From: Saccostrea echinata
Lineage: Eukaryota
Direction of reading: 5' to 3'
NCBI RefSeq assembly: GCF_033153115.1
Contig: NW_026889774.1
Coordinates: 23,126,001 to 23,190,000, forward strand
DNA: 64,000 nt
Numbering within the stretch: the first letter of the stretch is position 1; every line of letters begins with the position of its first letter. A model generated the notes under the pieces. The model was not told the origin of the DNA and searched no databases. It saw nothing but the letters and a program-made list of their open reading frames with translations. The translations under genes and the position numbers were made by a program. Positions 23,618 to 61,712 of the stretch are shown here, piece after piece.

Positions 23618-26394
23618 TCATTTCTGCTTTGAATGTTTCTTGCTCTTCCTCTTTACTTTTCTGTTTCTTCTTCTTTCTTTCTTTTTCTTCTTTTCTGGAA
23701 AAAAAGTTTGATTTTACAACAACAAAATATTTAAAGATAATTTTTATTTTCCTGCAAGAATAAAACAAAATAGCAATACAGAAAGATCCATGTAACATGC
23801 AACTATATCTGTATTGTAATTCCTTCTTTGTCATTAATAAATACCATACATTTTGTGTCATGTATGTCGTCCACGTTACCTTTTTCATCGTAAATATGAA
23901 ATGAAATTAACAGTGAGACATAGAATAGATATCATGGTTATGGGAAAATATGAATTAAATTCTCCCAAAACTTAGTTTTTTGGGGAAAAAATTATTGCAA
24001 CTGAGTTTCCGAGTCTTTTTGAGATAGATTTATATTATGCGGTAAAAGAATCTTTGAAAGCATTATTTAAAAGTATAATAAAATTATTTCTGCATTAGTG
24101 TTTTTTTTTTTTTAAATAAAAACGAATCCTTATTACTTTACTTATATGTTGCTTTAAATCAAAATTAGCGCTAGATAACTTTTTTGACTGTGTGCTATTT
24201 CAAATTCCCGAAATTGTGATTAAACAATTTACTTTTCGAAATATAAATCATCGGATCCAGGAAAGGGTTTTTAAAATTAATTTTTTTTTCAAAACGAAAA
24301 TTTTTAAAATTACAAATACAAATGCACATAATATGGATTTTTGAAAGATTCTAGAATTATGGTTGCAAATATATTTCTACGAATTTTTTTTTTTCTTTAA
24401 AGAAAAAAAATGAGCTAACCTTTCTTCTCAGAATTTAAGGTTACATCGTCCACCACTTCATCACAGATAGGATACCTCTGCTGGTCCCTGCTTAAGACTA
24501 TAGGAATAAAATCGTCATTGACATCAAATTCTTTCTTCGTAGACTATTAGTATACTTATTATTATAACTCTTTTTATTGAATGAAGCCATAATATTGTCT
24601 AAATGAAATCATCTTCTTAAATGCACCGTTCATATTCTATCATTCGAAAACGTTCATTATTTCTTTTACCATGATATAGAATAAATACAAAGGTTTCGAA
24701 GAGAGCTTACATTTCATACAAATAAGAAAACCCTTTTCCACAGAAGTCTCACAAGTTTTAAGAGGCATATAATCTGTTTTGAACTTCAGTTTAACATCCT
24801 TTAATTCGGTAATATTAATTTCTAGATAGCCAGATCCCCTTGATATCTGTTTTAAAACGTTTCCGTGCTGAAGGAAAAGTTCGTCATGTTTTTCGTTGAT
24901 TTCAGACCAGAGAACCCGCAGTGCCACTTTCATTTCAAGATGTTTCCGCTCAGTTTTAAAATTTAAAGAATGAATAGAGTTAGTATAACAATACTTGTAA
25001 TTCCAAGGGAAATTCTGATGACTTCGAACAATTATTGTCTGATCTCCCAGTTCTCGAATCATGACGTCACTGGGGGACCTTTCTAATGTTTCATTTGAAA
25101 TCAAATCGTAGATTTTGGTCTCTACAAAAGAGAAAACAAATATGAATTACAGAAAGTAACAGAAAAGAATTCTAAGCCACATAATTATGGATAATTAAAC
25201 AGATGTAATGTTTCCCTCAATATCATATTAAAGTTTTAATCAAAGAGCGAAATAAGATATGTAAATAATTCAATACAAAGTTCCACTCGTACTTGCCTAT
25301 CCGTTTTACTTTTCAAAAACAGGTAGAACTGACAGAACCAAAAGAATGAATAAAAAACTTTTGACTAGAAAGGTATTAAATAATATTTTATTTTTACTTG
25401 GATTTCTTGAAGACTTTCAACTTGAAACCGATTGTTTGCTTTCAACTAGCGAGAATACACTTAATAATAAGTGCAAAATTCTTATTAATGGCGCATTTTA
25501 AAATTCCGTATATATTCTGTATATATAGCAACAATGTTAGATGTCTGTTAACAAATAACAGAACTTCTCCATGCAAGATCACCGTAGCAGGTGACTGAAT
25601 TGTCTTGCTGCATTTAAGGAGATGTGGAGATCGTGAGAATAAAAAAAACGAAGCAATTAAATCGTGCATAAAGACAGACAAACATGCATAAAAACACAAA
25701 ACTGGTCTTTCAAAAAAAAAAATTACTTTCGTACATTCCCGGAATTAGGATTTTTTTTTTACATGCCATGGTATATATATTCTAAAATCTCAATATAACA
25801 ATGAAAATTTGCTACGATGCATAACCTTTTTTTAAACATCTCATGTTTTTCTCAAACCATTTTTCTTTCCTTTTTCTCCCCTTTCTCGTCTTGATAATGC
25901 AGCTCTTTTCCCACATACAATGGATCGGCGAGTTCCTCAGATCTTCCCTCAGGGCTCTGTAATTGTCTGTGTTAAAATATTTTTGGGTATATCCAGATAC
26001 TTGCATCAGCTGACTCTCGTTTGTACACTTGACATGTAATTCTTTAAAACGTTGTTTCATCCTCACTTTGCCTACAATTTTCAATTCAGGTTTTTTAATT
26101 ATTCTTTTTTATATCAAGGATATTATTGCATGCTGTTTTCTTGTGCATATGTATGTGTTGATTTCTAATATGCCACACAATCTTACTTTTGAATGAGAAC
26201 AATTGAAGGACAACGATGTCTCTTCATTTACCATTGATTATGCTATTAATTAATGTGAATTATATTCAATAACTCTAGAAAACATTATATTTGTGAAGAT
26301 GTACATAGAAAACATCACAATACTCACCTATCATGACAAACAGACAGACTGTCAGTACTTTGAGATTTGCTGCTGAGTACAAAGTAAAGGACAT
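23618..26394 (-). CDS. Gene A: secreted SUEL-like/CUB-like protein with polybasic tail, 292 aa; exons 26394-26328, 26071-25826, 25121-24711, 24497-24420, 23694-23618
   Basis: All four introns phase-1 GT-AG with an open frame: MSFTLYSAANLKVLTVCLFVMI|GKVRMKQ...HCMWEKSC...RCLKK|ETKIYDLIS...RSHQNFPWNY...KGFLICMK|FLSRDQQRYPICDEVVDDVTLNSEKK|EKKKKKERRRNRKVKRKSKKHSKQK*. TATA-like CTTATATAAA ~120 bp upstream of the ATG. Confidence 0.85.
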
Positions 26395-29300
26395 TTCTCT
26401 TGAAGCTAATACTACAGATTCTCTAACAGTATCGTGTTTTGAAATAATCAGAACTGAATTCCTTCTCACATTTTTGTCTGCAAATTTTCCTGAAGGATTT
26501 TCGGATATAAATACTTTATATAAGTTCCGTCAATTGTATACCAATTTAGATAGGCGAATATTTCCGTTCTTGTCTAATCGGGAATTTGTTAAATTTAATA
26601 CAGTTTCCTTTAACTTCCTAACAATGGAAATATGTCTGCCTTTTGTAATGGCACAGTGCTGGCACCGTTCTGATTATGATCTTAAATTTAAGGACAATCA
26701 ATGAAAATGGTATAATTCAATTGCAGAATTATGAAATTCATTGAGATAGATGACATTTGTAACCTATCATTGTTGAATCGGGCGGATGCAAGGAGCACAA
26801 CATGGGGTCTAACCTATCTGTGTTAATTTCCTCAACCAATTCAGCAAAACTTTACTACAAATATTTCAAATGGTAAAACCAATATGTACACTCTATGCTA
26901 ATCAAAAAAATACCCAGAAATATTTTGCAAGACACTTCTGTGATTACAGAGAGCATTTGCAACTGTGTTTTTTCGAGTTGCAGTATTGAATTTTGCAACT
27001 GTGTTTTTTTTTCACCTATGAGTTGCAGTATTTAATGCTGTTTTCTTTGTTTATAAGTGATCTTTTCGTAATGCATCTTGTTTTAGTTCTATATAAGCAA
27101 AACCCATTAACTTCGCAATTCAAAATACCATGTACTAGTATTTGATGATAAGAAGTACATCTGAATACATTTAAATGAGTGAATGCCCTGCGTTAATAAC
27201 TCAATTGCAGTATATCAGAATAATTATGATTAGGATTTAATATTATCATTATAATCAAAATTAATTAAAATTAATGATATATTGGTATTTTTAAAAAGTT
27301 ACATAAAATTTGCATTGCAAGGACACATTGAAAGGTAAAGCTACTACGAATCACCGCATACATAAAATACACTAGTAACTGTTGCACATCACTGTCGAGA
27401 ATATTAAGATAAAGAGAAATACCAGTCTTCAGATTTCTTGCTATTTTTTCATGGCATTTATTAAGTGTTACTTGTGCCTAAACCTTTATGAAGTATAGTT
27501 TACAATGTGCACGTATTCTTTGTGTTGCTTTGACTGTACTTTATAGCATATTTGACTATGCATTACATACATGAATATAAGGGTTCTAATACACTGAATG
27601 ATCGCCGAAGAACCATGCAGCTGTAAATCCTTTACTCATGACAGCGACGGGATTAATCAAAATAAAACCAAAATTAACACATTAAAACCAGGGCGGGGGG
27701 GGGGGGGGGGGGTTAGAACAAAGTCAAAAATTTTAGACATGAAGTATGCAAAAGATGGAATGATGTGATGGAAAACATGGCGATGTCTGAACGAGCATGT
27801 GAATAGAAATGAGTAAAATAAAAGAGAATCATTAATGCAGTTTGTGTTTTACGGGTCAATTAAAGTAAGTGGTGTCCGAAATCGTCCAGAAAAGCAGATG
27901 AAGCAAAATGGTCAAGTTAGCCTCCAACTTTGCTAGCCTAGGGGACGACTCCCCTTCTTTTCACAATTTAAGAGAAATTAAAAGTGGAGAGAGGCGGATC
28001 GTCATCAATATCTAGCGAAGATGGTTGAAACCACTTAAAGAAATTTAAAAATCAATCTGTAGCAATTTATTAATCATTATGCCATAATGTTACATAATTA
28101 ATACTTTTTTAAATTTTACCTTATTTCATCTTATTTGTAATTTATTTTTGACTGTACATTTAAAGAATACTAGTATTCAACTAATAAGTAAAATATAAAA
28201 CATATTTTATATTAATTTATATAAATAAAATATATTATATCAATTTTTTTGTTAAGCATTAGATGTGGGAATTATTAGACTGTAAAAATATATTAAGCAA
28301 AATGAATTTGAATTATGGGTCATTCTGGAGATATAGTTATATTACAATTAAATTATTTGAAAGAAATTTCTAAATTACTCTTAATTCAAAATTGTTATTT
28401 ATTACTCTCAATCATAATATTTTTTTCCATTTCCTTACTACTAGTCATATTGATTTTATGGTTTATGGCAATGCATGGTCACCAACCCCTTAATTAAGCA
28501 GCAGTGCATAGACATTGTTAAGAAAAATTGACAGTACATGTATATTAAAATTATATCATAATTTCTTTTTCTAATATCTGAAATATCTAGCGGGAAATAC
28601 GCACCTCATCCCCTTATTCGAATCCATGTATAATTGTAATTAGGAATGATATCTGATTGATAAATTTTAAATCTATTCACTATAACTCTTCTTGACCGTT
28701 GGCGAGTAAACAATCCATTACTAAATCAATAAATATTGCGAGAATAAAGGAAACAAGCTAATTCAGTCATGAAAAATGTACCATTATTTAAAACAATTCG
28801 TGAAAACGTGATTGATTCAGTTTCAGCACCAGCAGGTTACGATTTCTCTCTTAGAAATGAAATAAGTATATAATTTCGTCCACTTCTGCAGACGACAGTC
28901 TACTGCAGAGTTTGTTTATAAGACCAACAACAGCAAAATTCGGAAATTATTTTTCTTTTTTTTTTTAATCAAAGCTTTAAAAACATAAGGTATATAATAA
29001 AGTTCAAGAATTCTTACAAAATGTTCCATGTATAATGGGTACTAGTGCATTGTAATAACTTCAATTAAAGTTCATGCAATACACGAGTAATAGTTTGAAT
29101 ATTGTAATTGTTTAATTTTTGCTATAACCGTAGACATGTACGACATGGCTAGACAAATTAAACACTTAGGTCTATTAAATTCCTCATATTTTCCTTAACA
29201 TTGAATAGAGACAAACTTTACAATATCTAACGTTTGAAGTTTGTAAATAATACTATGAACAGTTCCGTAAACTCGACAGCTACGAGTATGGTAGTCCGAA

Positions 29301-29519
29301 AGCATCAATCCAACGAAAAAATTAAACATTCAAGATCTTAGTTCAAAACGAAGAAAAAAAAGTAATATATTACGACCACGGCTATTGCATTTTATATCAC
29401 TCTTTGGATATGCGTTTAATACTATTACTATTTAATCAAAAAACAAATTGAATCCCTGCAAGTTTTTTAACCAATTAAAAAAAATTAAAGATGACAGCCG
29501 ATTTAAGGCTACTCATAAT

Positions 29520-31106
29520 GGTGTAATCTTGACTGTGATATGAAAGAGACGAGTGGAATATTCAACCTTTCCATGTATAAACGACATTCATTCATCATCA
29601 TTCATATTTATTTTAGAGTACACAGCATTTGTTCAACACATTGATGACTTTGAAATTCACACCTGGTATCCTCGGACACCGTAATTGAACTTAAGTGTAA
29701 TTAGTAAACTATGTCATGACACCAAAAGTAGGAGAGTCATTCAGAATCTCAGGTGAAAAAACAAAATTTTTTTTAGTAAATTTATTACAAGAATCAACAA
29801 ATAAAAATGAAACAAATAGCAAGAAATGCGTTCGTCTACGAATCGCTTTGCACTAGCTGTTCCTTCCACGACAATGTCGGCTCTCTTTGTGCCAAAAATA
29901 TACATAAGGTAAAAAAAAAATTAAAAAAATCTACACGTCATCAATAACTAAAACAAACCTGAATTAGGGGAGGTAATGTAATTACAATAAAACAATTTTA
30001 TTTTTTCCTGAAAAAAGTTCCTGATGTTTTCGAACTGAAATTATCCTTTTATGGTTCTATTGTTTTAACTGCATTGTGTATTCCTTAGGAGAAGTGCATT
30101 ATTCCTTTGACAATGATTATAAAACTGGTAGAAAGGTCTCAGTGAGAGCTACATTTCATACAAACAAGTAAACGCCTTTCTGCATGGTCGTCAGAGGTTT
30201 TTCAAAGAAAATAATCTTTTTTGAACTTAAGTTTTTATGCCCGTTAATAATCAACAGATGCATGTAACGTAGAGAAAATACTAGTGCTTTGAAGGAAACT
30301 GACAAAAACTATATGCACATAATATGGATTTTTGAAAGAAATTAGTATAAGGGTTGCATATAATACTACGAATAAGATCTTTTTAAATTAAGAAATTTAG
30401 CTAAACTTTTCCGCAGAAATACCATTACGTTGTTCATCACCTCGTCACAGATAGAGTACCTTTGCTGGTCCCAAACTATATATATAAAATAATCATTGAC
30501 ATTCAAATGCTTTCTTCGTGGACTCTCGATATACTAATTAGATTTTTATTGGTTATTGAAATCAGAATCCAATAATTGTCAAAATGAAAATTATTCTTTT
30601 ATCGTTCGTTTGTTTTAAATGCACTGTGTATTCCCTTTAAAAAGTTCATTATTTCTTTGACAATGATGAAAAGCGATAAAAAGATCTGGCGGAGAGATCT
30701 CATTTCAGACAAAAAAAACTCTTTATACAGAAGTCTCGCAGGTTTACTAGAAATATAATCTGTTTTGAACGTAAGTTTTACGTCCTTTAATTCGGTAACA
30801 ATAATTTCTAGATACCCATGTCCTCTATATGTTTCAAGACATTTCCGTGCTGAACTAAAAGTTCGTCATGTTTTCGTTGATTTCAGACCATAAAACCTGT
30901 AACACTACATTTATTTCAAGATGTTTAAGCTCATGCAGTTTTAAAATTTAAGGAATAAATAAGGTTAGCATAACAGTATTTGTAATTCCGAGGTAATTAC
31001 TGATGACTTCAAAAAATAATTGTCTCATTGATCTTATTCTCGAATGGTGACAACATTGGGGATTTTTCTAATACTTCCTTTGAAATCAAATCGTATATTG
31101 CCGTCT
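29520..31106 (-). pseudogene. Mosaic pseudogene B of the same family
   Basis: 31106-30702 is an A-like CUB exon with in-frame stops (TIIF*SHQ*LPRNYKYCY) and a mutated donor. 30475-30405 is the linker exon (WDQQRYSICDEVM). ~30250-30070 is a second CUB-exon end. ~29970-29520 matches the last exon and 3' flank of gene D. No signal-peptide or SUEL exons found. Confidence 0.85.
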
Positions 31107-33740
31107 CTATAAAAGAAAAGAGAATGATCATGAATAATTATAAATTACCCCAAACATAACTTAAATGGATTAGTGCATCCTAGACCAAACAAATATTGGT
31201 AATTCAACAGTTGTAATTGCTTTTCTCTCAAATGAATATTAGTTTTAGTTAAAGAGTACAATACATAAATGCAAGGAACGTAACATGGTGTCTAACCAAA
31301 GTATATTCATTTCCCCGAATAATTCAGAAAAACTTCAAATATTTCAAATGTCTAAGATCCTGTATGTTCACGTATACTCAATGCTTTATATCATGGTAGT
31401 GATATAGACAAACATTCGAAATCAATGTTTTGCATGACACTGCAGTGATTAGAAATAACATTTGCATCTGTTTTTCTTCTACGTTTGAGTTAGTTATTCG
31501 ATTTGAATATCGACCTACATGTACTTATTTATTCAAAGTGCAAGCAATTCAAGATCTTCAAAAGTATCTCACCCAAATGGCAATTTAAGAGCCCATTAAA
31601 ATAAGAAGTACATTTGAATACATCTTAATGAATGCAAACTCTTACTCAATCAGCAAGGTATTTAGATTTTTTTGGTCATTTTTGATCATATGCAACATCA
31701 TAAATGATTATGATTTAGAATTATCATAATCATGATATTACGATGACCGATATATTCATTATTGCTATCTCAGAATATTTACTCAGTTTACATTACAAGC
31801 CAAAGTGATAAGTAAAACTTTACAACCTTTATCAATTAAAGTATATATTTAACATTAAACAAGAATATTAAGAATAATAAAGAAAAGATAACGTGTCAAT
31901 CAACAGATGTCGTGTTATTCTATTCATTGCCATTCAGCGTATCTTGTGTCGTCATACGAAACGGCTTACTGATCTATTTTTCTTCAGCAATGTTGCTTTT
32001 ATAATGCTTTCAAAACTGAGGCAAAGCATTTCGTTTTATGAATGTAGAATTCTATTTATCAAATCCATAAATCCTTTAATATATGAATGCATATATTTTT
32101 TTATTGCACTTGAAATTTGTAAAATTAAATATTAATACTTTGTAGTATATAATAAAATCAATAAATGGGAATTATTGGCTTCTATGGAGAGTATTTTGTT
32201 GAATAAAAATTAAATTAATAAAATAAAACTTAAATAAGAGATTACTATTAATTACTTTTAAATTGTAATAAATTATACTCGATCATAATTATTTATATAT
32301 ATATATTTATATAATTTTATTTTGCAATTACAACATCCCATATACCGATGCTTATCTTTTAATACATAGAGGATGTTCTATGTTTTGTAGTTGAATGTGG
32401 AATTTGTTTCACGAGTGGGGCTGGAAATTTTTTTTTTTTTTTTTTTTTTTTAAATATCAAAAATTCTGTCTCACGTGTATTTATCATTTTGATAATTTTT
32501 CACCCTATGAAAAACATCACTTTTATTCAATAAATAATTACATTATTTCACCTTTGAAAAAATAATAGAACGTTTTATTCTCGTGTGAACTTGTCCAGAC
32601 AAATGCATCACATCATTCGGATATTGATTGACCCGATCAAATTGATTTTAATATTTATGACAAGGCATGGTGGTCACCACTATTCCTTTAAGAAAGCATG
32701 GGTACCTGAAAATTGCAAAGAAAATTTACAGCATGTGAAATTTATCAATTCTTTTTTTAGTGTCAGAAATTTAGCCGGAAATACCCACCTCAACCCCTTC
32801 TGTAAATCCATGTAATTAGGAAGGACAACCTAAATCAAAATTGCATCTGTTCAACGTCCTTCTATCTGACGGATCATCGAATAAATACTATCAAAATTCA
32901 TACTGTGTATCTAATTCAATTTCTATCTATCTGTCATTATTCAATCGTTAAATATTACAAATGAAACATGAAATTAAAGCACTGAAAAAGTTTTTAAAAA
33001 AACTTACTTTGATATCTTTTCAGCGCCAGCAGAATTATCACTGAGGTTAGGACTAATAAGAAATGAATGCATACTTGGTCAACTTCTACTGACGTACTAC
33101 AGCAAAGTTTGTTTTCAACAAACTAGTAAAGCAAAGTTCTAAAATTTGATTTTCAATTTTTTTTTTTTAAACCAAAGCTTCCGACACAAACGTTTAAAAA
33201 AAGAATTTTGTGAATACTTGGGAAACTTGCTATCCATATTATTGAATAACTTAACTCAAGTAAGTGCAATGTGTTAGTTAAAGCGGATAATTATGCGATC
33301 CTTCGTCAGGAATGTAGACATGTACAAAACGGTTAGAAAAATTAACCCCTTATTCCAAATAAATTGTTTGATAAGCCCAAGCATCACGTACTTGGACATG
33401 AGAAGAATTTATCAATATATATAAATATTTTTTTTCTCACTCTCTCCCTCTCTCTCTCCCTCTCTATATAGATATCCATTTTCAAAGAAAATCTCTCTCT
33501 CTCTCTCTCAATTTATGGATCAAGGAAGAGGTACTGGTTGTTGCTTTGAATTTTAACATGTACTACTATACATGTTCAATATATTCCATAAAAAATGCTA
33601 TTGCTTATTAAAGTTATATTTTATTTGGATTACGAAAAACAATAATAAAATATACATATTTACACAAGGGTAAAGAACTATTTGAACTTAAGAAAACACT
33701 ATGCAAAATTAACTTCTTCTCATATGTATGTACATGTATG

Positions 33741-34020
33741 AAAAATATTATAATAGTGGACAGTGATCAATCTCATAAATCTCGGGCTGCAAAAGATACT
33801 TATCGTGAACAGGGTAAAAGACAGAATCCTGGAAACACAAGTAGTGGAATCAGGTGTCTAGCAGGAGTAAGCATCCCCTGTGACCGTCATATCCCCTGTG
33901 ACCGTCACACCCGCCTTGAGCCTTCTGTATTGATGAATCAACGGAGTAATTGGTATGAAATGATGGCCTAACAATTTTGTTATGTCACAGATCAGTCAAA
34001 TACAATGTCTGTATTTGCAA
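33741..34020 (-). mobile_element. 3' end of a Penelope-like retroelement
   Basis: GTGGAATCAGGTGTCTAGCAGGAGTAAGCATCCCCTGTGACCG motif shared with the RT-bearing copies at ~45.7 kb and ~60 kb. Confidence 0.65.
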
Positions 34021-34038
34021 TGAAGGTCATGTTACAGC

Positions 34039-35933: not shown

Positions 35934-38900
35934 TTAGCGACACGATCTATTTCTTTTTTCGCTCTTTTTATTTCTTTTTCCTTTCTTTCTTCTTCTATTT
36001 CTTTTCCTCCTTTTCTTACCTGCAATTAATAAGTTTAATAATTAAAGTTGAGTAAATCCAAAGTTATGACGTTAGAGAATAACAAAATAGCTCAGAATGG
36101 TCTCAACCAACCATCACTGCCAATTACTACCTTTTCAATTTACAATACAGGGCGATGCTTTTATATGTTTGCATCACAATATTTAAGACACCTATATTGA
36201 TATGACTTTGTTATTCTAGTAAAGTTATCATGTTATTTTAGAAAGCGGTTGTTAATATGACACAATGGCTGAAATAAATTTTATTTGTTCTTTTCTGAGA
36301 ATCAGCAGACACCTAATAACTTTTTGACTTGAAATCCTCAAAGTATATATACATGTATATCAATATAATAAAAACAATTTCAAGTCTACGAAAATAAAGT
36401 ACTTGTTCATAAATAAAATATATTATATTGAATAAATTAAAGCATTAGAATGTTAGCTGGGACATCAAAATGAAATGATTCTTTATCTGTCCTAAAATAA
36501 AAATCATGTAAAGAAATCTAACCTCTTTTATTTTGTTTGATGAACGTTTGAGCGCTTACTTTGTCCATCACTTCATCACATATCGAATTGTTCTGCATAC
36601 TGCTTACAACTAAAATTTAAACAAATCACCCCGATCTCACAATATTTTTTTTCATGCGTTATGAACATAAAACCACTTAAGGATGACATTTACTCAGACA
36701 AAAAACTCCACCGATAAGAGCGAAAAACCATCTAAGGTACATTGTACATCTATAATTGTAGTATTATTATTGACTTTCAAATAACTAGGCCAATGACCTA
36801 TTTTTCATGCTTGTAGCCCCTGAGTATTTCTCGGAAAATACCTCAGTTTTTTACACTAATATTTCTTTTACTCAAAGAATATTACAAGCAACAAAACTCT
36901 TCTAGATAAAAGGTTGTATTTGTTGTATTTGTTGACAAGGTCATTGTATGGACCATAAAACTTGCGAAATGATGACTTCAAACAAAACTGTTGATATCCT
37001 TGTTTCATCAACTTGTTTGTCAGTAGCTTGCTTCGTTTAAGAAATTGTTCGTATGTAGAGCATGCTCATGTGCATCGTATCAACTGGGAGACAAAAAACC
37101 CCATATGCAGGTGATAAGGGTACTGTATATTGCTACATAAGTAAGGGAAGTTGTCGATTTAAAAATTGAAGTCATCCCGTTTATCATGAAGCTTTGTTAG
37201 TAGGTTACCATTAAAGTCTTTTTCTAGTAAAATATCCAAATATGAAATAGATGTGTCAGACTTTTGGGATCTTTTATTTCAAGCTCACTGAGATATATCG
37301 AGTGGACATGTGAATGGAAGTAACTATTGTTAATTGATAATACGTCACCGATATATCTTAATGTCGAGTTAAAGGACACAGCAAGTGTCTTCTTCTCGTT
37401 TAGAAGTTTTTGAATAAATTCTGCTTTATATAAATACAAAAATAGGTCTGCTAACAAGGGGGCGCAATATTACTCATGGGAATTCCAACAGATTGTTGGA
37501 CACGTTATTTCTGGTGACGTAAATATAGTTAATAATGAGTACCTTAAATCACTTATTTTAAAGGGGCTAAACTTTAGGGAACCCCGGTCTATTAACTGGA
37601 ATCATAATTTCATAAATATTTTGAAATAAATTCTGTGGAATATTACGCCAGGCGATGGACCAGACATGAAAAAGAAGCAGTGACACTTAAATTGTCAGAA
37701 TGGATTAAATGTATCAGTTATATGTTAAAATCTTGCATTAAAGGGTTTTTATCACGTATCTATATTTCTTAAAAATAAAGCACTATTATATTCTTGAAAC
37801 ATATAATTATCGTTTAATTATGAAATAATGTTGAAAACAGCCGAAATTAGACGATAAAACGCCCGTAATATAAGGTCCTCGAAGTAAAAATCTCCAACAA
37901 TTAGATAGGGGTCACGTGGTACTGAAACGTCATAGGTGTCAATAGAACTCGTAAAGCTTATCGTAAGAAAAATTATTTTGAATAGATTTTTACGCTAAAT
38001 AAATAGAATACACAATATGGCCGGTTGAAATTTTGACATCGACTATATTCCTTTGGTTATGGACGGTCAATCTTTTATGTATGAACGTCTAGCAAAGAGA
38101 AATAACCAGAAAATATGCCGAGAAGTCACCGAAGACGAAGCTGTTGATTACTCGGGACTTCGACTAAAGAGAATGAATTACTGAAGTTTAACTTCGTAAA
38201 CATTTATAAATATGGGGATTTTAAATTCTCCTTTATTATTATTTTTAATTAATTATACATAAATAAATCCAGTATATCTTCTATCTGTTCCAGCAGTGAA
38301 TATCATGTAATAGAAATGACACTCTTCAATGGCGCCGTACGCCATTACGAAGTTAACAACATTCCTACTAGATTCTGTGCGATTTTTTAAAATGCGTGTT
38401 TGTCATTTATCATTTTTTTTTATAGGTATCTTTCCTTAAAATATTTTATAGGACAGAAAAAAAAATTGTGATCGATCGAACATAAACGATTGTTTTGAAT
38501 GGAGATAAACGCCATCGCATTTGCAGAAAAAGGCCCCCTTTCATCTTTCGACCAAGTCTAGGAAATGTGGGAAAAAAATTCCTAAGACCTTTCTTGTGCA
38601 CATTTGTGCATCCTAAGGTCATAAATTATACCTTACTAGCTGTCAATTATCCATTTATCAGTTAATTATTTTATAACAGGTTTAACAGACACAACAAATG
38701 AGCCCTTTTTTATACACAATAAGTACTTCGCTTGACCAGAATTGACACCTATGACGTCAGAGCAATGGCGCGTAACATCGGCGATCAAAATATGCATATT
38801 GAGAAATTCTTTGAATCGCTGAAACATCAAAAATATTAATTTTCTAGCAAAGATTTTTAAATATATGATTTTAATTGCATGTGAACTTTGTCATATCAAA

Positions 38901-54393: not shown

Positions 54394-54627
54394 TATACAC
54401 CATACTAAAGGGCAAAAAGTAACTGTGCAAATATTCAACTAATGAACTTCCAACAAATACAGTCAAGATTATTATGTATCTTTGATAATGCCTGTATATT
54501 TGAAACCTATGTCTACCACTTAGAATGCATGTCTATAACATTTTGATTTGAGAACAGTAGAGAACAGAGGTGCCTTTGACTTAAGAAGATTTACAAAGTC
54601 TATGACGGATGTGATCGATGTATTACT

Positions 54628-55130
54628 AGAGGAAAAGGATGAAGATAATGAACAGTGATTAATTTCATAAATCTGTATACCAATCCTGAACAGGGCAAAA
54701 AACACAGATCCACCGGAAACACAAGAAATGGAATCATGTGCCTAGAAGGAGTAAGCATCCCCTATAGATCGGTCACACTTCCAGTGAGCCCTCTGTATTG
54801 ATAAGGTTCTCCATAGTCAAAATAAGCCTTAAAACAATGGCCTAACATTTGGTATGGAACATGTCAGTCCAAATACGACTCACGGATAGATTATATTTGC
54901 TAACAAGGTTATTATTTTGACCATAGAATTTGCGATATGTCGACTTTCATCGAGATTTAGAAAGCCCTATAATTTATTTTTCATTAGCTTGCCTCGATTT
55001 AAAAAATAGAACTTGCTCTTGCTTAAGAATACAAAAAATGTAATACATATAAATGGGTTGGCTAATAAAGGGATTTTAATGCAAATCGATATTCTAACAG
55101 ATTGTTGGAAGACTGGTCTCTAAAAGTTAG
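54628..55130 (-). mobile_element. Penelope-like retroelement 3' fragment
   Basis: GGAATCATGTGCCTAGAAGGAGTAAGCATCCCCT motif plus decayed RT C-terminal sequence. Confidence 0.6.
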
Positions 55131-55669
55131 CATATATCAAGGCATTGATGTCTAAGGAGTTCATACAAGAAAACACGTGCAATATGTGGTCTTCCGTCGT
55201 CTTGATGAAATGTGGTTTGTTGTCAATCAATGACGACTTTCGATGAGGATAAAGGGATGTTGTTGAACAATTTCGTTCCTGTACCAGATTCAACCTAGAT
55301 TTCCATTATCATCAAATATGATTTGTGTGTACAGTAAAGCCTTTCAGAACTTAAATCAAAAGACTGACGTGGTAAAAGCAGACTTTTTTTTTAAGTTTTC
55401 TCCAACTCTACAGTACAGACTTTAAACGGTTGCCTCTGCTCTTAGATAGAAATGCTATTCATTGATGAATTTTGGTTTAATCTTGCATTGGAAAAAGCAA
55501 AGGATGCCTACCCTGCGCCTTGCCCGCCTTGATCACACTCTCTGCATCAGCACGGGCGAGTCGCTGGGCACTGCGGGCTGAAGTCCCCGTAATCTGTACC
55601 TAACGGTTCTGGAATTTTTTACTTTCAGTCCAAGGATTTTTGAATGCACTTTTACGTCTCTTGCAAAAT

Positions 55670-55935
55670 TAATTCACTCATATAAGATGTCACCAGATAC
55701 CGATGAAGGGCCTAAATTTGAATCTTTACTAGACACTCATGGTCAATGACCAGTGAGAGTTCTTTAGTGTGCACACGACTGTCGTAACACGGGTCCTTGG
55801 TTTTTAAGGTCTCATCCGAATGACCCGCAACTTTAAAGTGCCGAGCACTAGACCAAGGAACAGTTCCTACCTATTTTATTTTAATTAAGATTCGTCGCGG
55901 CCATGACTTGAACCCACGACTCTTGAGAGCTCTAA
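55670..55935 (-). mobile_element. Second copy of the Nin/Deu-like SINE
   Basis: ACACGGGTCCTTGGTTTTTAAGGTCTCATCCGAA...CTTGAACCCACGAC is the reverse complement of the 50.7-kb SINE core and head. Confidence 0.75.
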
Positions 55936-56407
55936 ATGACCTTCCGTTACATAGGTAATAATAGGTATCCTGGAATGTGATACTGTTCAACTTGAAGACT
56001 GACATTCAATATGGTGTGAAGTCATTAGGACCGCATCTCCAGAGAGATTGTATAGTATTCCAATGCACTCCAAGACCGAGCATCTTCATTCAGACGAGAA
56101 AACTTATTTAGTGAATAATTAATCAAGTATTCCTCATGCAATTTCATCGAGTAGCATTCAAAATTTATACACCACTGAAAAAAATATGTTGTTTCCAAAA
56201 ATTTGAATTCATCGTTTCAAATTGACATCTATCTTTAAAATGTGTTGCACAATTCATTTTTTCCTATGAGTTTTGGTGCTTTCTTATTAATTTGAGAAGT
56301 TTAATATATTACAAGAGAATTCAGGGAAAAAGTTATGTTATTTAATGATGAAAGAAAAACAATCTACACATTGAAATGTTGTCACTAAATGGCTTTTGTT
56401 CAGACAA

Positions 56408-56686
56408 AACAAGATGTGTTTGTGAAACACTATGCACCCGGCGGCAACAAAGTTCGAAAAAGCTATTTTTAGCATATAGATCACAGTCTAGGTCACAAGG
56501 TCATTAACCTTGGTGTCATTTGAAAGAACTTAATTAGTTGAGTTTGCATACCAAATATGAAGTCTCTATCTCTCATGGTTCAAAAGTTGTGGTGAAGGTT
56601 AAAGTTGACAACAGACACACAAACAGACAGACAGACAGGACAAAAACAATATGCGCCCCCGATCTATCGATCCGGGCGCATAAAAA
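56408..56686 (+). mobile_element. Complete short Helentron/HINE element
   Basis: Starts AACAAGATGTGTTTGTGAAACAC, (GACA)n microsatellite, terminal hairpin ATGCGCCC...GGGCGCAT, ends in an A-run. Confidence 0.8.
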
Positions 56687-58086
56687 TGCTTGCAAAAACA
56701 TTTTCACTTTTTATAATTTCAGAAAATGTTAACAGGTAGAAAACTTTCAATGATTTTAATTTCAATTTTTAACTCTCTTTTTTTTTCTAAACAGGAAATT
56801 CTTCTTTCTGTGAATGTGGAACGGTAGAAGAGGAGTTTTGGAATATGAATTAGTCTTCGAATAATTAGATGGTAATCGGAAATAAATGTGATAATTTACA
56901 TTTATATAATTCTTTTCACTTGGGAATTCAAAACATTATCTTCCGGCACGAGAGCAACATAAAAATATACTTCTGGAACATCGTGACCAAAGGTCGCGGC
57001 CTTTTAGTATATATGGAAATTCCAGTATAAAATGTAAACAAAAGTTAATATAAAATTTCCTTGATAAACAAAAACAGGTCCTCGGCTTAGTCATATATGA
57101 ATGATATTTGTCGACGACAGCTGCTATTTTGCTCATTGACTATCGCAAATTTTACCTATGACTGCTCACTACATGCGGACATACATGTGTATATCCATTT
57201 TTGACGAAGTTGATTAGAGTCCAATTTTCCCCTAGTGGTTATAAAACCTAAACTGCATCAAGATAGATGTGTTAATTAAGAACCATTTTCATATTTTCTT
57301 TTGTGAATCAAAAATTATTTAAAATTTTATGACTTTACATTAGCTAAGGTAAAATAACAATTATCACTAATTTAAAAGCAAAACAAAACAAAACTTTTTT
57401 TTAAATGTCTGTTTGTGTTTTATTATTATTTTTGTCCATTTTTATTGTAAACCATAATTATTATGAATTACGTAATGTAGATATGGTATCTGTTATCAAT
57501 TCTAAGGGGAAAATAAACAACTTGTAATATGCATTTTGTACAACTTCAAGCTTAAAATTCTTAAACTCTAAATGGCTCATATAAAAGTTACGCGGTAGGA
57601 CTAGTATTGAAATGTCAAATGCGCAAAAAAAAAAGAAGTCAAAGACAACTTAAACAGTTTGAATTAAACAACAGTAATACATGTATACATAAATTACTAT
57701 AATTTTCAATCCTTTTTAATTCATTGTCATAAATGCATATACTGAACAAGTTGTGTTTTAACACCTATCATGTTTTCTCGTTTAAATTAAATCCATATTA
57801 GTTAAAAATACAGAAGCCATTATCATTTAACCGCTACTAGAACGGATCAACTTTTTAGTTGAATTAAGCTGTTTTGTGTTTTCTTTAAGAATCAATACTC
57901 GAAAACCATCGAAAGATTGCAGGGAGACTCGGGTACTCCTTATGCGCGTAAACTTTTCTTTGCAATGGCAACTTTCTTTTTGTTTTTCAGGAATGTATTT
58001 CTAGAATTTACACTAATCTAGCAATCAAAACTTTACCTTACTTCACTCAGTTTTAATAAATATCTTGATTAGGAGGTTGTTTTTTT

Positions 58087-58464
58087 CCCTAACAAAAAAA
58101 CTATAGTTAACTATAGTTTACTATAGTATCAACGTTTTTACTGTAGTAAATCAAAGATTTTACTATAGTAAATCAAAGGCTTAACTATAGTAAATCAAAG
58201 TTTTTACTATGGATTTCAGATTGTTTATGTTATGTTCTCTTATTTTACATGCATATTTTTATATTAAGTAAAAAAAAAAATTACTTGCATATTAAAATAC
58301 TATTTTCATATTTTACATCATTGGTATTGAATTTAAGAGATATGACGCTTCAAAATCTTTTAAAAAGTTCTACAATAAAGTTTCATAGTAAATCAACGTT
58401 TCAAAGTATTTACTATAATTAACTATAGTAAACTATAGTTAACTGTAGTATTTTTTTGTTATGG
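58087..58464. mobile_element. MITE with ACTATAGT subterminal repeats
   Basis: TAACAAAAAAACTATAGTTAACTATAGTTTACTATAG ... CTATAGTAAACTATAGTTAACTGTAGTATTTTTTTGTTA. Confidence 0.7.
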
Positions 58465-58591
58465 TCTGTATATGAAAATAAAAAAAGTTAGGAATGCATT
58501 TTATAAGTGACTAGTAATCAATGACTCGTATTTACACCTTTTAAGTAAATTATTTTGTGCGCTACAATTACTTGGGAAAAAATATGAAGTT

Positions 58592-61500
58592 CTAATGTCT
58601 GTAAATCTTAGCACACATGCTCATTTCCTCTGGTGAATGGGGTAACCTTGTTTTCACGTCTGAAATTAAAAATAGGTATATAATAGAAAACTTCAATAAA
58701 AATACCTTCTAACCAACAAAATGCCTAGTGTATTTATTTTAAAGTAAATAGTATCTTTCCTTTATTTTAAAAAATACTGTAGTCTCGCAACCTAGTTCGT
58801 GAATATGATTGCCACCTTTAATATCAAATTTATGAATGTTTTACTCTGGGAGATTTTTAAAATATCTAATTGATTTGAGATACATATAATTTAATGTGTC
58901 AAGCTTTAAAATTATTCATCATTACTTTTTTTTATTTTTAACAGGTTATCAGGAAATTACTTTTGTAAGATATGATGAATCCCCTGCCAGATTTTGACCT
59001 GTCTCTGACTGTGAACAAAATAGTCAATTGTCCACCATAGAGCCAAACGCCTTTTTCTGCAGAAGACTGTCTTAAGGTGCACGTGACGTTGCCCCGCACA
59101 TGCGTGATGCTAAATTTATCATGTGAGAAATCTACATCAAGGTCATGAATACGGAGGTACAGGCTCCCTTCTCGATGAATCTGATTCATATATCAAAATA
59201 CATTTATAAAAGCAACAAATTGTATATTCATGATACATTTTTAGCCATATGTGTTCTAATTTCTATAAACTGCCGAGATACTTGTGATTGTCAATCAATA
59301 AACTTCAAATTTGTTAAGCATGATTGTCAATTCCAAATTCGCATGACAAATTGTTATGCTTAGACTCAAAAGAAGCCAATTTAGTTTTTAATTATTCTTA
59401 TCTGATTAAAACGTCAACAGATGAGTATTCCTCCCTAGACTGCATCTTTAGGACTGTTAATTCAAGAATAAACTAGAAGAAAAAAAACTCTGTAACAGTA
59501 GTTCTCTGTAAGCACATACCTTGATGAGCGTTTTACAGGTCTGTTGTTTGGGTCTATAATTCCAGGGATAATCGTCATGACTTCTAAGAATACCATTTCT
59601 GCCATTTACTTCACGTTTGCCACAAATATCATGGATTTTCTCTAAAAGTTGTGAAGTAATTAGTAACTTCTTTCAAAATTTTATGTTAATTTGAAATGGA
59701 AAAATAAACAGTTTTTGGATTGCATTACATCATGCAACTAGTGCTTCTAAGTAGCATTTAGCTTGTTTCATTTATTGTTACATCCATTATGTTTTATATT
59801 CTCATAATCAACCTGTATATTGTATTAGAAATTCATAATTTTTAAATACTAACAGTGTCTAGTTGAACGTTGGATAACCTTGGTATTCCAGAAAATCAAG
59901 TACATGTAACATGAAAAGGTATGAGTTATCTTTCTAAACGAAATATGAAGAAAACGAAAAGTAATCAAGCTCAAAGTTCCAGTGGAACAATACAATTTTG
60001 GAGCAGAGCAAACACGGATCTCTAAAAATATAGAGGTGGGATCAGGTACCATGGAGGAGTAAGCATCCCCTGTCGACCGGTCACAACCGCCCTGTGCTCT
60101 TGCCATGATCGGACAAACGGACATAACCGTTGACTATTCAGTATGAAAATAATGGCATAACAATTAGTATGAAAAACGTCAGTCAACACTCAAGTAAATG
60201 ATAGACTGCATTTGCAAATATGTAACATGCATGCTGGTCATTGTATAGACCATCGAATTTGCGAAATGTTGACTTAAAACGGGGTTTTTGATATCCTTGT
60301 ATCATCAATTTATTTTTTAGTAGCTTGTCTCGTTTTAGAAATCGTTCGTAAGTAGAGCATGCTCTTGCGTATCGAATCAACTGGGAGGCATAAACTCCAT
60401 ATGCAAGTGATAATGGTGTATTGCTACATAAATAAGGGTAATTGATAATAGAAAAGTTGAAGTCATTACGCTTAACATAAAGATTGTTGGAAGATTGATC
60501 TCCAAAAACTACATAGATATTGTCAATTAGAAACTCAAGCATCTTATTATCATCAACCCCGGAGTACTTGTGTGTACAATCGGAATGTTTTAACAAAATA
60601 ATTTTGCAAATGAACAATGACAAGGTATGCAAATTTACGATTTCCATTTTGATTGAAAAAGCAACTGTGTTGCTGTCTATGTTGTTAAAAAGCCTGTAGC
60701 CCTTTTCACAAAAAAAAAATCTTACAATTAATTTTCATCGTAAGAGATATTTTACGATTTTATTCCTTTTCTCAAAAATTCTTACGAGATTCTTAAGTGT
60801 AAAAATTTGTCGTAACTTTACGAGAGCTCTAACCCTCTCGTTATATCTTAGGGCCAATTTTAATTTAAAAATATACTAGTAACAGATAAAACCCATATAA
60901 ACGTTTAAAGAGCTGTCTTACGCATCCTTTAATAGCATTTTATATTATTTCACAATTATTGCCGAAAAATTAAATGAAATACACTGCAAAATATTTACGA
61001 TAGCAGTTTCTCTTAAAATTTTCATATGACCAACTTCTACGTCAGACTTTCGATTGTGAAGTCAGATTTCAAACTTCCTTGCTTCACAATCCATTGCACT
61101 CGATTTTTGTTAAGCATTATGTTTGGTTCACTTACAAGTTGGGAAAACTTTGCTTCATTTTTATTCTCATCCACTTTTTTTAAGGATCATAAAGCACATT
61201 GAGATCCTTGTTAGGGGAGAAGTCTGTCGTAAGTAAAATCTTAAGTTCAATCTGCTACGAATGCGTTCGTGAAAAGCACCTTAGATTTATCGTAAGAGAT
61301 TTTTTCACTTAAAATCTTACGCAAAAACTTTTTTTTGAAAAGGGCTACTGGACTTTAATTTATCGTGGGGAAAGGTATATAAAGTGTTGAAAAGTTGAAT
61401 CTGTTTACCTACTTTTCGGAATACACTCGTGTCCCTTTGTAATAAAAAGTGGTGCTTGTTTTCCTGTACATCCTACGCCATTGGAAATAGCAAATATTTG

Positions 61501-61712
61501 GGGTGCATCCCAGCTGACAGTGCAGGACCTCTTCCAGAAACAGTTATTCTTTTGCACCAACAGTTGTGGGGAGATTCCTTTGCATAATCGAGTCGACCTT
61601 TTTGACAGTCGAAGGTTAGACATATGGATGTCAAGAGAATAAATAAGAGAATTCTTTGGACAAGAAAAACGGTAGATTTTTTTCTGCCATCCAACACGAT
61701 CTCGGACTATTC
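58592..61712 (-). CDS. Gene F: SUEL-like/CUB-like paralog, 5'-partial; exons 61712-61413, 59641-59520, 59180-58961, 58659-58592
   Basis: IVRDRVGWQKKIYRFSCPKNSLIYSLDIHM...LCKGISPQLL..NNCFWKRSC...GC...HECIPK|KKIHDICGKR...GILRSHDDYPWNYRPKQQTCKTLIK|IHREGSLYLRIHDLDVD...RGFIISYK|NVKTRLPHSPEEMSMCAKIYRH*. Signal-peptide exon not found in the window. Confidence 0.82.
59937..60650 (-). mobile_element. Penelope-like retroelement relic in a gene F intron
   Basis: MLEFLIDNIYVVFG..., KRNDFNFSIINYPYLCSNTPLSLAYGVYASQLIRYARACS...QGY; internally deleted RT plus 3' motif. Confidence 0.85.
60693..61351. mobile_element. TIR MITE with CTTACGA subterminal repeats
   Basis: CCTGTAGCCCTTTTCACAAAAAAA ... TTTTTTTGAAAAGGGCTACTGG. 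Confidence 0.7.

What the first reader, a model, noticed from the sequence alone, without database searches (positions are those of the whole stretch)
23618..61712. Tandem cluster of an unrecognised secreted cationic family: signal peptide, degenerate SUEL-like lectin domain, CUB-like domain, polybasic tract
Seen in sequence: five spliceable paralogs (A, C, D, E, F) and one pseudogene over ~38 kb share C-x-W-[KRE]-x-x-C, I-[YH]-D or VRD at the domain junction, RSHxx[FYT]PW[ND]Y (RSQRNFPWNY in C), GF-x-x-[CS]-x-[KR] and a C-x-x-[VI] linker. A, C, D and E have hydrophobic N-terminal exons, and no transmembrane segment is visible. Established: the Cys spacing in E (LSCxxGxxI...YxG..C..C...C.xK..C.I...C...C) resembles SUEL/rhamnose-binding lectin domains, and GIIRSH..PW.Y...C...L...F.T...GF.I.Y parallels the CUB consensus. 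Inference: a rapidly diverging, birth-and-death family of soluble surface-binding proteins; gamete recognition (spermadhesins are CUB proteins, SUEL is an egg lectin), larval cement/shell matrix, or mucosal defence are all plausible. I do not recognise it as a characterised family.
Basis: partly seen in the sequence, partly recalled or inferred. Interest (0 to 1): 0.9.

Follow-up and report, generated by a model that had tools for sequence, protein, structure and literature searches.

The report
Oyster SUEL-like/CUB cationic secreted gene cluster
This stretch of the rock-oyster (Saccostrea echinata) genome holds five intact copies and one broken copy of an unstudied mollusc-only gene family encoding secreted, strongly positively charged proteins built from a degenerate sugar-lectin-like module and a CUB module. 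The gene anatomy is now clear, but what the proteins do is still unknown.

Summary
A family profile hits the 923-Mb genome only in this cluster. NCBI already annotates A, C and E as "uncharacterized protein" of Saccostrea echinata.

Both domain guesses survive testing, although Pfam recognises neither domain.
- Domain 2 is a CUB domain. An AlphaFold model matches solved CUB domains at Z 10-10.8, and profile-profile comparison with the genome's own canonical CUBs gives P 2.5e-7.
- Domain 1 is a degenerate SUEL/rhamnose-lectin-like module. Four weak but concordant tests all rank SUEL first. The eight cysteines are in register, but the YGR, DPC and KYL sugar motifs are missing.

The proteins have N-terminal signal-type exons, no membrane segment and a median pI of 9.4, and most end in a polybasic tail. 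The family occurs across bivalves and gastropods and is unnamed everywhere.

- The paralogs are old and under purifying selection (dN/dS 0.16-0.33), not rapidly diverging.
- F continues about 8 kb beyond the window and carries a second SUEL-like domain.

Verdict: a real, undescribed family made of known folds. Moderate interest.

The parts
26328..26394 (-). Gene A (NCBI LOC133192974), exon 1: start codon and hydrophobic signal-type segment, ending in a phase-1 GT donor.
   Evidence: tblastn of P0062 residues 1-24; donor read in the sequence.
25826..26071 (-). Gene A, exon 2: shortened SUEL-like domain 1. It keeps 4 of the 8 family cysteines, includes CMWEKSC and has an internal basic loop.
   Evidence: (profile E 0.0011).
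24711..25121 (-). Gene A, exon 3: CUB domain, running from the IYD junction through RSHQNFPWNY to GFLICMK. A phase-1 donor follows directly.
   Evidence: (E 1.7e-12).
24420..24497 (-). Gene A, exon 4: linker with the C-D-E-V motif. The NCBI model reads through the GT at 24419-24418 to a stop two codons later.
23618..23694 (-). Gene A, probable exon 5: polybasic tail (15 K/R in 20 residues) plus stop codon. It is in frame through the phase-1 donor of exon 4 and matches the tail of the S. cucullata ortholog P0063.
   Evidence: (P0063 residues 269-291, 61% identity). The splice itself is not confirmed by reads.
30094..31256 (-). Pseudogene B: remnant of an A-type CUB exon with a frameshift near 30826, a linker remnant at 30381-30518 and a partial duplicate at 30094-30234. 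Signal and domain-1 exons are deleted.
41875..41935 (-). Gene C (NCBI LOC133192729), signal-type exon. The NCBI S. echinata model omits it, but the S. cucullata ortholog P0064 has it.
41239..41475 (-). Gene C: shortened SUEL-like domain-1 exon (CMWKKKC; 4 of 8 cysteines).
   Evidence: (E 7.7e-4).
40270..40671 (-). Gene C: CUB exon (RSQRNFPWNY to GFLICMK).
   Evidence: (E 8.1e-11).
36523..36609 (-). Gene C: linker exon (C-D-E-V).
35934..36019 (-). Gene C: polybasic tail exon plus stop codon.
   Evidence: 100% identity to the P0065 C-terminus.
48351..48408 (-). Gene D, signal-type exon. Its start codon lies 381 bp from E's, head to head.
   Evidence: No database protein was recovered for D, so it was analysed exon by exon.
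47900..48175 (-). Gene D: SUEL-like domain-1 exon with the full cysteine set (CSWRKRC).
   Evidence: (E 5.2e-12).
46773..47159 (-). Gene D: CUB exon (RSHQNFPWNY to GFVLCLK). Both cysteines of the first CUB disulfide are lost.
   Evidence: (E 3.3e-13).
46355..46462 (-). Gene D: linker exon (C-E-D-V), ending in a phase-1 GT donor. The following tail exon was not identified.
   Evidence: (E 0.029).
48789..48843 (+). Gene E (NCBI LOC133192207, protein P0001, 348 aa), signal-type exon.
49242..49964 (+). Gene E: a single exon holding both the SUEL-like domain 1 (8 cysteines, CYWKQNC) and the CUB domain (GIIRSHSQTPWDY to GFVICYR). The inter-domain intron seen in A, C, D and F is absent.
   Evidence: E 1.9e-70; structure models.
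50059..50268 (+). Gene E: exon with the polybasic tract (23 K/R in 40 residues), followed by the C-R-S-V linker motif.
56795..56853 (+). Gene E: last exon, an acidic Cys-containing C-terminus plus stop codon, 6.5 kb downstream of the previous exon.
61413..61712 (-). Gene F: second SUEL-like domain exon (CFWKRSC). The gene's 5' exons lie beyond the window end.
   Evidence: E 6.4e-20; 62-64% identity to P0038. Upstream exons at L071 613-894 and 7643-7909.
59520..59641 (-). Gene F: first half of the CUB domain (IHDIC, RSHDDYPWNY), ending in a phase-0 donor.
   Evidence: (E 1.4e-12).
58961..59180 (-). Gene F: second half of the CUB domain (to GFIISYK), with a phase-1 donor after it. No polybasic exon was found.
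   Evidence: (E 4.1e-8).

Best explanation
The region is the only locus in Saccostrea echinata for a mollusc-restricted, uncharacterised family of secreted, highly basic glycoproteins.

Shown or directly supported:
- Each gene encodes a signal-type N-terminal exon.
- Next comes a roughly 100-residue disulfide-rich module with the SUEL/rhamnose-binding-lectin fold. It has lost the canonical sugar-binding motifs.
- A divergent CUB domain follows immediately.
- After that come a short Cys-containing linker and, in A, C, E and most relatives, a lysine/arginine-rich tail.
- The cluster holds three old lineages. F-type has two SUEL-like domains and no tail. E-type is conserved to Ostrea. The A/C/D type is so far seen only in Saccostrea, has lost two or more disulfides, and includes one dead copy, B.

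Inferred, not shown:
- After secretion the polybasic tail, helped by basic loops inside the domains, holds the protein electrostatically on polyanionic material such as sulfated mucus or matrix glycans, acidic matrix proteins or microbial envelopes.
- The rigid SUEL-like/CUB pair then serves as a recognition module for proteins rather than for sugars.

I put about 0.9 on the identity and anatomy and about 0.35 on this mechanism.
For: Family and anatomy:
- The motifs occur only at the five loci.
- The family profile hits the 923-Mb genome only in this cluster.
- NCBI models for A, C and E, with S. cucullata and Ostrea orthologs, were returned.
- A phmmer scan of 1.8 billion representatives found 43 clusters at E<=0.001. 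Every named one is a bivalve or a gastropod.

CUB domain:
- The AF2 model has pLDDT 78 and pTM 0.74.
- Foldseek's top hits are dominated by CUB proteins at probability 1.0.
- VIA-align gives Z 10-10.8, rmsd 2.2-2.8 A over about 105 residues, to the CUBs of Kremen, neuropilin, MASP, C1s and TSG-6.
- The family profile finds PCPE-1 CUB1 in the PDB at E 0.021.
- hhalign against the genome's own canonical CUB exons gives probability 93%, P 2.5e-7, over 97 columns.

SUEL-like domain:
- The domain-only model has pLDDT 81.
- Foldseek's top hits are almost all SUEL lectin domains, 13 of the first 14 ranks.
- Six of VIA-align's top eight are SUEL domains, at Z 4.8-5.5.
- hhalign against 26 canonical SUEL domains of this genome gives P 0.0019 over 77 columns, with the cysteines in register. 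Cross-controls give P 0.087 and 0.39.
- 25 of the 30 nearest named ESM-Atlas clusters are SUEL_Lectin.

Secreted and cationic:
- Hydrophobic N-termini, no later hydrophobic segment in 49 of 50 members, median pI 9.4, and at least 18 K/R in a 40-residue window in 24 of 50.

Gene structure and selection:
- All inter-module introns are phase 1, the pattern typical of shuffled extracellular modules.
- dN/dS is 0.16-0.33.
Against:
- Neither domain reaches its Pfam threshold.
- The SUEL evidence is individually weak: Z about 5, Foldseek E 0.03-0.3 and hhalign probability 14%.
- Signal peptides were judged by hydrophobicity only, not by a dedicated predictor.
- The tethering mechanism is pure inference from charge. 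F and its relative P0038 lack the tail, D's tail was not found, and NCBI's model of A stops before the tail.
Confidence: 0.7

Rival explanations
1. Humoral immune effectors. The SUEL-like/CUB pair recognises microbes, and the polybasic tail is itself membrane-active or is released by furin-type cleavage as cationic antimicrobial peptides.
For: Tails and internal loops carry R-x-[KR]-R sites: 3 in E and 3 in C, and up to 6 in relatives. A review read here states that a bivalve SUEL-type lectin agglutinates Gram-negative bacteria through LPS (PMC8878817). Tandem expansion with a dead copy is common for immune genes.
Against: The canonical sugar-binding motifs are missing. dN/dS is well below 1, with no sign of arms-race evolution. 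There are no expression or challenge data.
Confidence: 0.2
2. Gamete-recognition or reproductive-tract proteins, by analogy with spermadhesins (CUB) and the sea-urchin egg lectin (SUEL).
For: Spermadhesin structures are among the fold hits: 1sfp and 1spp, Z 8.9. The A/C lineage evolves about three times faster than E on the CUB tree.
Against: The fold hits are no better to spermadhesins than to any other CUB. Purifying selection and conservation of lineages across bivalves and gastropods are unlike typical fast-evolving gamete proteins. There are no tissue data.
Confidence: 0.08
3. Structural components of shell matrix, larval cement or periostracum, where cationic tails pair with acidic matrix proteins or mineral.
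For: The proteins are strongly basic and secreted. Basic, lysine-rich proteins and CUB-containing proteins are discussed in the mollusc shell and adhesive literature (paper lists).
Against: None of the twelve family accessions tried appears in the searchable literature. The family has globular recognition-type domains rather than repetitive low-complexity matrix sequence.
Confidence: 0.12
4. Domain 1 is not related to SUEL lectins. It is an independent small disulfide-rich alpha/beta module that resembles them only by convergence.
For: Pfam's SUEL model finds 43 canonical domains in this genome but none in the window. The best Z is only 5.5, below the 7-8 that unrelated models often reach. The YGR, DPC and KYL motifs are absent.
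Against: Four different methods rank SUEL first. All conserved cysteines align in order with SUEL's. The negative-control profile comparisons are far weaker. A and C lack cysteines 3, 4 and 7 and, as far as the exons show, cysteine 1. These are exactly two SUEL-type disulfide pairs, taking the pairing 1-3, 2-8, 4-7, 5-6 from my recollection of the literature.
Confidence: 0.15

Closest known systems
SUEL / rhamnose-binding lectin domain (Pfam PF02140: sea-urchin egg lectin, fish egg RBLs such as CSL3, SUL-I, the latrophilin/ADGRL and LAT-1 Lec domains)
   Same: About 100 residues. The order of secondary-structure elements is the same. Eight cysteines sit in the same order with similar spacing, including the C-x5-C pair. 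These domains give the best structural matches and a full-length profile alignment.
   Different: It falls below the Pfam threshold. The YGR, DPC and KYL motifs that build the sugar site are absent. There is a longer, often basic, insert between cysteines 6 and 7. A and C retain only four cysteines. It is therefore probably not a conventional galactose/rhamnose binder.
CUB domain (Pfam PF00431: PCPE-1, C1r/C1s/MASP, neuropilin, TSG-6, Kremen, spermadhesins)
   Same: The same beta-sandwich fold at Z 10-10.8. The profile alignment covers 97 columns, from the G-x-I-x-S ... P-x-x-Y start to the terminal GF motif. The first disulfide is present in E, F and most relatives.
   Different: It falls below the Pfam threshold. 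The second disulfide is missing throughout. A, C and D have also lost the first. Only one of the three acidic Ca2+-site positions aligns clearly. The signature here is RSHxxPWxY rather than SPxYPxxY.
Secreted proteins held on glycosaminoglycans by C-terminal basic tails (class 3 semaphorins, heparin-binding VEGF isoforms); comparison from general knowledge
   Same: A globular recognition domain followed by a K/R-rich tail containing furin-type sites.
   Different: No sequence or domain relationship. This is an analogy of mechanism only and was not tested.

Membership tests
SUEL_Lectin (PF02140) | Scores above the Pfam gathering threshold. | tested here: not met
   No hit for any window exon or for 29 family members. 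A genome-wide PF02140 scan finds 43 domains, none in this window.
SUEL_Lectin (PF02140) | Characteristic alpha/beta fold of about 100 residues. | tested here: met
   Domain-only AF2 model with pLDDT 81. SUEL domains take 13 of Foldseek's first 14 ranks (prob 0.33-0.99, mostly 0.8 or more, TM up to 0.55) and six of VIA's top eight (Z 4.8-5.5). Atlas TM is 0.53-0.59. Each score is weak on its own.
SUEL_Lectin (PF02140) | Eight half-cystines in conserved order. | tested here: met
   Present in E, in D and in the family consensus and aligned in register by hhalign. A and C keep only four.
SUEL_Lectin (PF02140) | YGR, DPC and KYL motifs forming the galactose/rhamnose site. | tested here: not met
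   In the hhalign alignment these template positions face non-conserved family columns. Canonical copies from the same genome keep all three motifs.
SUEL_Lectin (PF02140) | Binds L-rhamnose or D-galactosides. | not testable with these tools
   Needs glycan-array or haemagglutination assays.
CUB (PF00431) | Scores above the Pfam gathering threshold. | tested here: not met
   No hit. The best is P0038 (F-like) at 13.8 bits against a cut-off of 21.4.
CUB (PF00431) | Remote sequence homology by profile methods. | tested here: met
   hhalign probability 93%, P 2.5e-7, 97 columns, against nine canonical CUB exons of this genome. The family HMM's top PDB hit is PCPE-1 CUB1 at E 0.021.
CUB (PF00431) | CUB beta-sandwich fold. 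| tested here: met
   The top-ranked VIA hits are almost all CUB domains, Z 8.3-10.8, rmsd 2.2-3.4 A over about 105 residues. Foldseek gives probability 1.0.
CUB (PF00431) | Four cysteines forming two disulfides. | tested here: not met
   Only the first pair (D-I-C ... x-C) is present in E, F and most relatives. The second pair is absent family-wide. In A, C and D the junction cysteine is replaced, and D has neither.
CUB (PF00431) | Acidic Glu/Asp/Asp Ca2+ site (the Ca2+-binding CUB subset). | tested here: inconclusive
   The Asp of the 'yD' motif aligns with a conserved family Asp, but the other two positions do not align cleanly. E itself has Asn there.
Spermadhesins | A single free CUB domain of about 110 residues from mammalian seminal plasma. 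| tested here: not met
   The proteins here are multi-domain mollusc proteins. Spermadhesin structures match no better than other CUBs (Z 8.9).

The most novel reading that the evidence does not exclude
The family could be a mollusc-specific class of 'charge-anchored' recognition proteins or pro-proteins. A sugar-blind SUEL-like/CUB head would bind a protein partner. The polybasic tail would either dock the complex onto sulfated mucus, matrix or microbial surfaces, or be cut at its many dibasic sites to release cationic host-defence peptides. The second case would make it a previously unrecognised precursor type for antimicrobial peptides in bivalves and gastropods.
Probability: 0.12. Interest if true: 0.65.

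Novelty: new variant of a known kind. Interest (0 to 1): 0.4.

Why it matters
Molluscs carry many lineage-specific secreted gene families whose roles in mucosal immunity, adhesion and shell formation are unknown. This work turns one anonymous set of "uncharacterized LOC" genes into a defined family. It now has a fixed architecture (signal, SUEL-like, CUB, linker, polybasic tail), a phylogenetic range (bivalves and gastropods), three old sub-lineages and a single compact locus in an aquaculture oyster. That makes it easy to probe by RNA-seq, in-situ hybridisation, recombinant binding assays and knock-down. It is also a clean example of a lectin fold that has lost its sugar site yet stays under selection. 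Finally, it shows that two domains invisible to Pfam can be recovered by structure prediction plus within-genome profile comparison.

Tried and rejected
Searches that found nothing useful:
- Pfam scans of all window exons, 29 family members and the NCBI models gave nothing above threshold.
- A word-indexed homolog search with the family alignment returned only seven proteins and added little.
- Literature searches returned nothing on this family. They used twelve LOC/UniProt identifiers and keyword combinations such as CUB, oyster, lysine-rich, SUEL and mollusc. The two papers opened were irrelevant to it.
- Earlier-findings look-ups were empty.

Ideas rejected:
- 'Rapid divergence or positive selection' is rejected for the A/C/D pairs (dN/dS 0.16-0.33). 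More distant pairs are saturated and uninformative.
- 'A, C and D are decaying copies' is rejected. They have intact frames, canonical splice sites, purifying selection and S. cucullata orthologs.

Not resolved or not done:
- A polybasic exon for D and a terminal exon for F were sought and not found.
- The profile found no further family member in the 10 kb on either side of the window, apart from F's own 5' exons.
D and F were analysed exon by exon by reference, and the full-length sequences used are database proteins returned by the tools.

Full report
**What the window is.** The window is eukaryotic DNA with about 31% G+C and no gaps. The exact-match protein for the long plus-strand frame at 49.2-50.0 kb is NCBI 'uncharacterized protein LOC133192207 [Saccostrea echinata]' (P0001, 348 aa). 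Its orthologs are 87% identical in S. cucullata and 57% in Ostrea edulis. The window is G000:C25:23126001-23190000 of a 923-Mb assembly.

**Check of the observation.**
- A six-frame regular-expression scan found the three diagnostic motifs exactly five times each. All hits were at the five claimed loci and none elsewhere.
- A profile built from 29 family members (A1) gave significant hits only at those loci. Scored against the window's stop-to-stop frames, E-values ranged from 1e-70 for E to about 1e-3 for the shortened domain 1 of A and C.
- Searched over the whole genome, the same profile hit only this cluster.
- tblastn and blastn with A's exons revealed the sixth copy, B, at 30094-31256. 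It is 72% identical to A in DNA across the CUB exon and flanking intron. It has a frameshift near 30826, a linker remnant and a small internal duplication. A deletion has removed the signal and domain-1 exons.

**Gene models.** Database proteins returned by the tools fix the models of A, C and E.
- A is LOC133192974 (P0062) and C is LOC133192729 (P0065). S. cucullata orthologs are P0063 for A and P0064 for C.
- D and F were read exon by exon from the sequence.
- Every junction between modules is a canonical GT-AG intron in phase 1: signal to domain 1, domain 1 to CUB, CUB to linker, and linker to tail. The donor sits one base after the GFxxCxK codons in all five genes.
- There are two exceptions to this exon pattern. 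E has lost the intron between domain 1 and the CUB domain. F has an extra phase-0 intron inside its CUB domain.
- NCBI's model of A stops two codons into the intron after the linker exon. Using that conserved phase-1 donor instead joins in frame to a 25-codon polybasic exon ending at 23618.
- C's signal exon at 41875-41935 is missing from the NCBI S. echinata model but present in the S. cucullata ortholog.
- D and E are head to head, with start codons 381 bp apart.
- F continues outside the window. Residues 27-112 of the F-like protein P0038 match 64% at L071 7643-7909, which is window-equivalent 71643-71909. These residues form a further SUEL-like domain. A basic linker maps at L071 613-894.

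**Domain 2 is a CUB domain.**
- Pfam does not call it. The best score is 13.8 bits, against a cut-off of 21.4, for P0038.
- The family HMM's best hit among PDB sequences is the CUB1 domain of PCPE-1, aligned end to end at E 0.021.
- The AlphaFold2 model of E, built on the 29-sequence alignment, has pLDDT 78 and pTM 0.74.
- Foldseek against the PDB returns mostly CUB proteins at probability 1.0.
- The Foldseek-independent VIA-align scan puts CUB domains almost exclusively in the top-ranked rows. Z is 10-10.8 and rmsd 2.2-2.8 A over about 105 residues for Kremen, neuropilin-2, MASP-1, C1s, TSG-6 and PCPE-1.
- As a sequence-level test I took nine full-length canonical CUB exons from the same genome. 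Profile-profile comparison with the family's domain-2 columns gave probability 93%, P 2.5e-7, over 97 aligned columns.
- The domain is divergent. Only the first CUB disulfide is present, and A, C and D have lost even that. Only one of the three acidic Ca2+-site positions aligns clearly.

**Domain 1 is a degenerate SUEL-like module.**
- To test it alone, I placed the exon-internal stretch of E (window 49247-49588) first in an alignment with family proteins. The resulting model has pLDDT 81.
- Of Foldseek's first 14 ranks, 13 are SUEL/Gal_lectin domains: the LAT-1 and latrophilin Lec domains, SUL-I, the C-terminal domain of rice beta-galactosidase, and CSL3. E-values are 0.03-0.6, probabilities mostly 0.8-0.99, and TM reaches 0.55.
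- VIA-align independently ranks the same families first, at Z 4.8-5.5 over 83-90 residues.
- Pfam's SUEL model finds 43 canonical domains elsewhere in this genome. A profile of 26 of them aligns to the family's domain-1 profile over 77 columns with the cysteines in register, at P 0.0019. The crossed controls give P 0.087 (domain 1 against CUB) and 0.39 (domain 2 against SUEL).
- In the ESM Atlas, 25 of the 30 nearest named clusters to residues 22-130 are SUEL_Lectin. The top score is 0.90 with 191 shared features, and structural TM is 0.53-0.59.
- Each line is weak, but they agree. I rate the fold and remote-homology claim at about 0.8.
The YGR, DPC and KYL motifs that the genome's canonical copies all keep are absent.
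- A and C retain only four of the eight cysteines. By my recollection of the SUEL disulfide map (1-3, 2-8, 4-7, 5-6; not verified here), the missing cysteines would be two complete pairs.

**Secreted and cationic.**
- A, C, D and E have N-terminal exons with a hydrophobic core.
- Among 50 family proteins, only one has a hydrophobic 19-residue window above 1.6 beyond residue 35.
- Median pI is 9.4 and the window's proteins are at 9.4-10.1. Half of the family has at least 18 K/R within 40 residues, nearly always at the C-terminus.
- N-glycosylation sequons and R-x-[KR]-R sites are common.
- In E the basic tract lies between the CUB domain and the linker. In A, C and most relatives it lies after the linker.
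- No dedicated signal-peptide predictor was available.

**Distribution and history.**
- phmmer over 1.8 billion representatives found 43 clusters at E<=0.001.
- Every named member is a mollusc. The bivalves are oysters, Mytilus, scallops, Mercenaria, Ruditapes, Mactra, Mya, Dreissena and the unionid Sinanodonta. The gastropods are Haliotis, Patella, Littorina, Babylonia and Gigantopelta.
- All are 'uncharacterized' or 'hypothetical'. Five carry UniProt's automatic name 'CUB domain-containing protein'.
- Several unnamed members sit complete on 1.0-2.4-kb Logan contigs. These contigs are too short to hold introns like those seen here. I infer that relatives are transcribed and spliced.
- A maximum-likelihood tree of the CUB domain splits the family into two clades, with support 97/94. 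One is an F-like clade of two-unit proteins that includes the gastropods. The other is a single-unit clade.
- Within the single-unit clade, the E lineage (S. echinata, S. cucullata, Ostrea) and a (D,(A,C)) lineage (support 98/92) are separate.
- A and C each pair with an S. cucullata ortholog, so their duplication predates that speciation.
- Nei-Gojobori estimates give dN/dS of 0.16 for A-C domain 1, 0.29 for A-C CUB, and 0.18-0.33 for pairs involving D. dS is about 1 or higher.
- The cluster therefore records old duplications, one gene death (B), one intron loss (E) and disulfide loss (A, C, D), all under continuing purifying selection. It does not show rapid divergence.

**Function.**
- Nothing measured here bears on function, and the RNA-read route was closed.
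- My best mechanistic inference comes from the anatomy. A sugar-blind SUEL-like/CUB pair would act as a protein-recognition head, since CUB domains are typically protein-binding modules (general knowledge). The polybasic tail and basic loops would hold it on polyanionic extracellular material.
- I give this about 0.35.
- Rivals are immune effector or antimicrobial precursor (0.2), matrix or cement component (0.12) and gamete recognition (0.08).

**Verdict.** This is a real, intact and previously undescribed mollusc family made of two known folds in a new arrangement. The evolutionary tempo was over-stated, and the biological role remains open. Interest is moderate (0.4): useful for mollusc biology, but not surprising in kind.

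Noticed in passing
window 45876-46223 (-), 60183-60647 (-), 37224-37457 (-): Three frames look like fragments of one repeated element. The first two share a '...QGYQ..R.KS.FRK..G.Y.D...' stretch. The third has an 'RYIGDVLSINN' stretch that I recall as reverse-transcriptase-like. One fragment lies in F's intron between domain 1 and the CUB domain, and one lies downstream of D. Pfam found nothing.
   Followed up: partly
G000:C12:10668993-10669247 (locus L002): The only family-like match outside the cluster. It is 36% identical to E's CUB region at E 0.003, with three in-frame stops, so it may be an old dispersed pseudogene fragment.
   Followed up: no
window 48409-48788: The start codons of D (minus strand) and E (plus strand) are only 381 bp apart. 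This suggests a shared bidirectional promoter for two paralogs of different sub-lineages.
   Followed up: no
window 24415-24420 and 23618-23694: NCBI's model of gene A ends at a stop just inside the intron. The conserved phase-1 donor used by C, by D and by the S. cucullata ortholog would instead add a polybasic exon. This is either a likely mis-annotation or an alternative tail-less isoform.
   Followed up: partly
window 1-23000: No open frame of 90 codons or more on either strand in the 23 kb upstream of the cluster, and no family hits there.
   Followed up: partly
L071 613-894 (-), outside the window: Between F's two SUEL-like domains lies a short 'ICRSDNGAVWITNFGRL' stretch followed by a basic run. 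It looks like the start of a truncated CUB domain. F may therefore derive from a duplicated SUEL-like/CUB unit, like the 520-640-residue two-unit relatives in scallops, clams and abalone.
   Followed up: partly
genome-wide: The genome carries at least 43 canonical SUEL lectin domains, several of them in tandem arrays (for example C51 at 4.14-4.38 Mb and C22 at 1.86-1.93 Mb). It also has a long array of CUB exons on C14 at 14.40-14.45 Mb, probably a cubilin-like gene.
   Followed up: no
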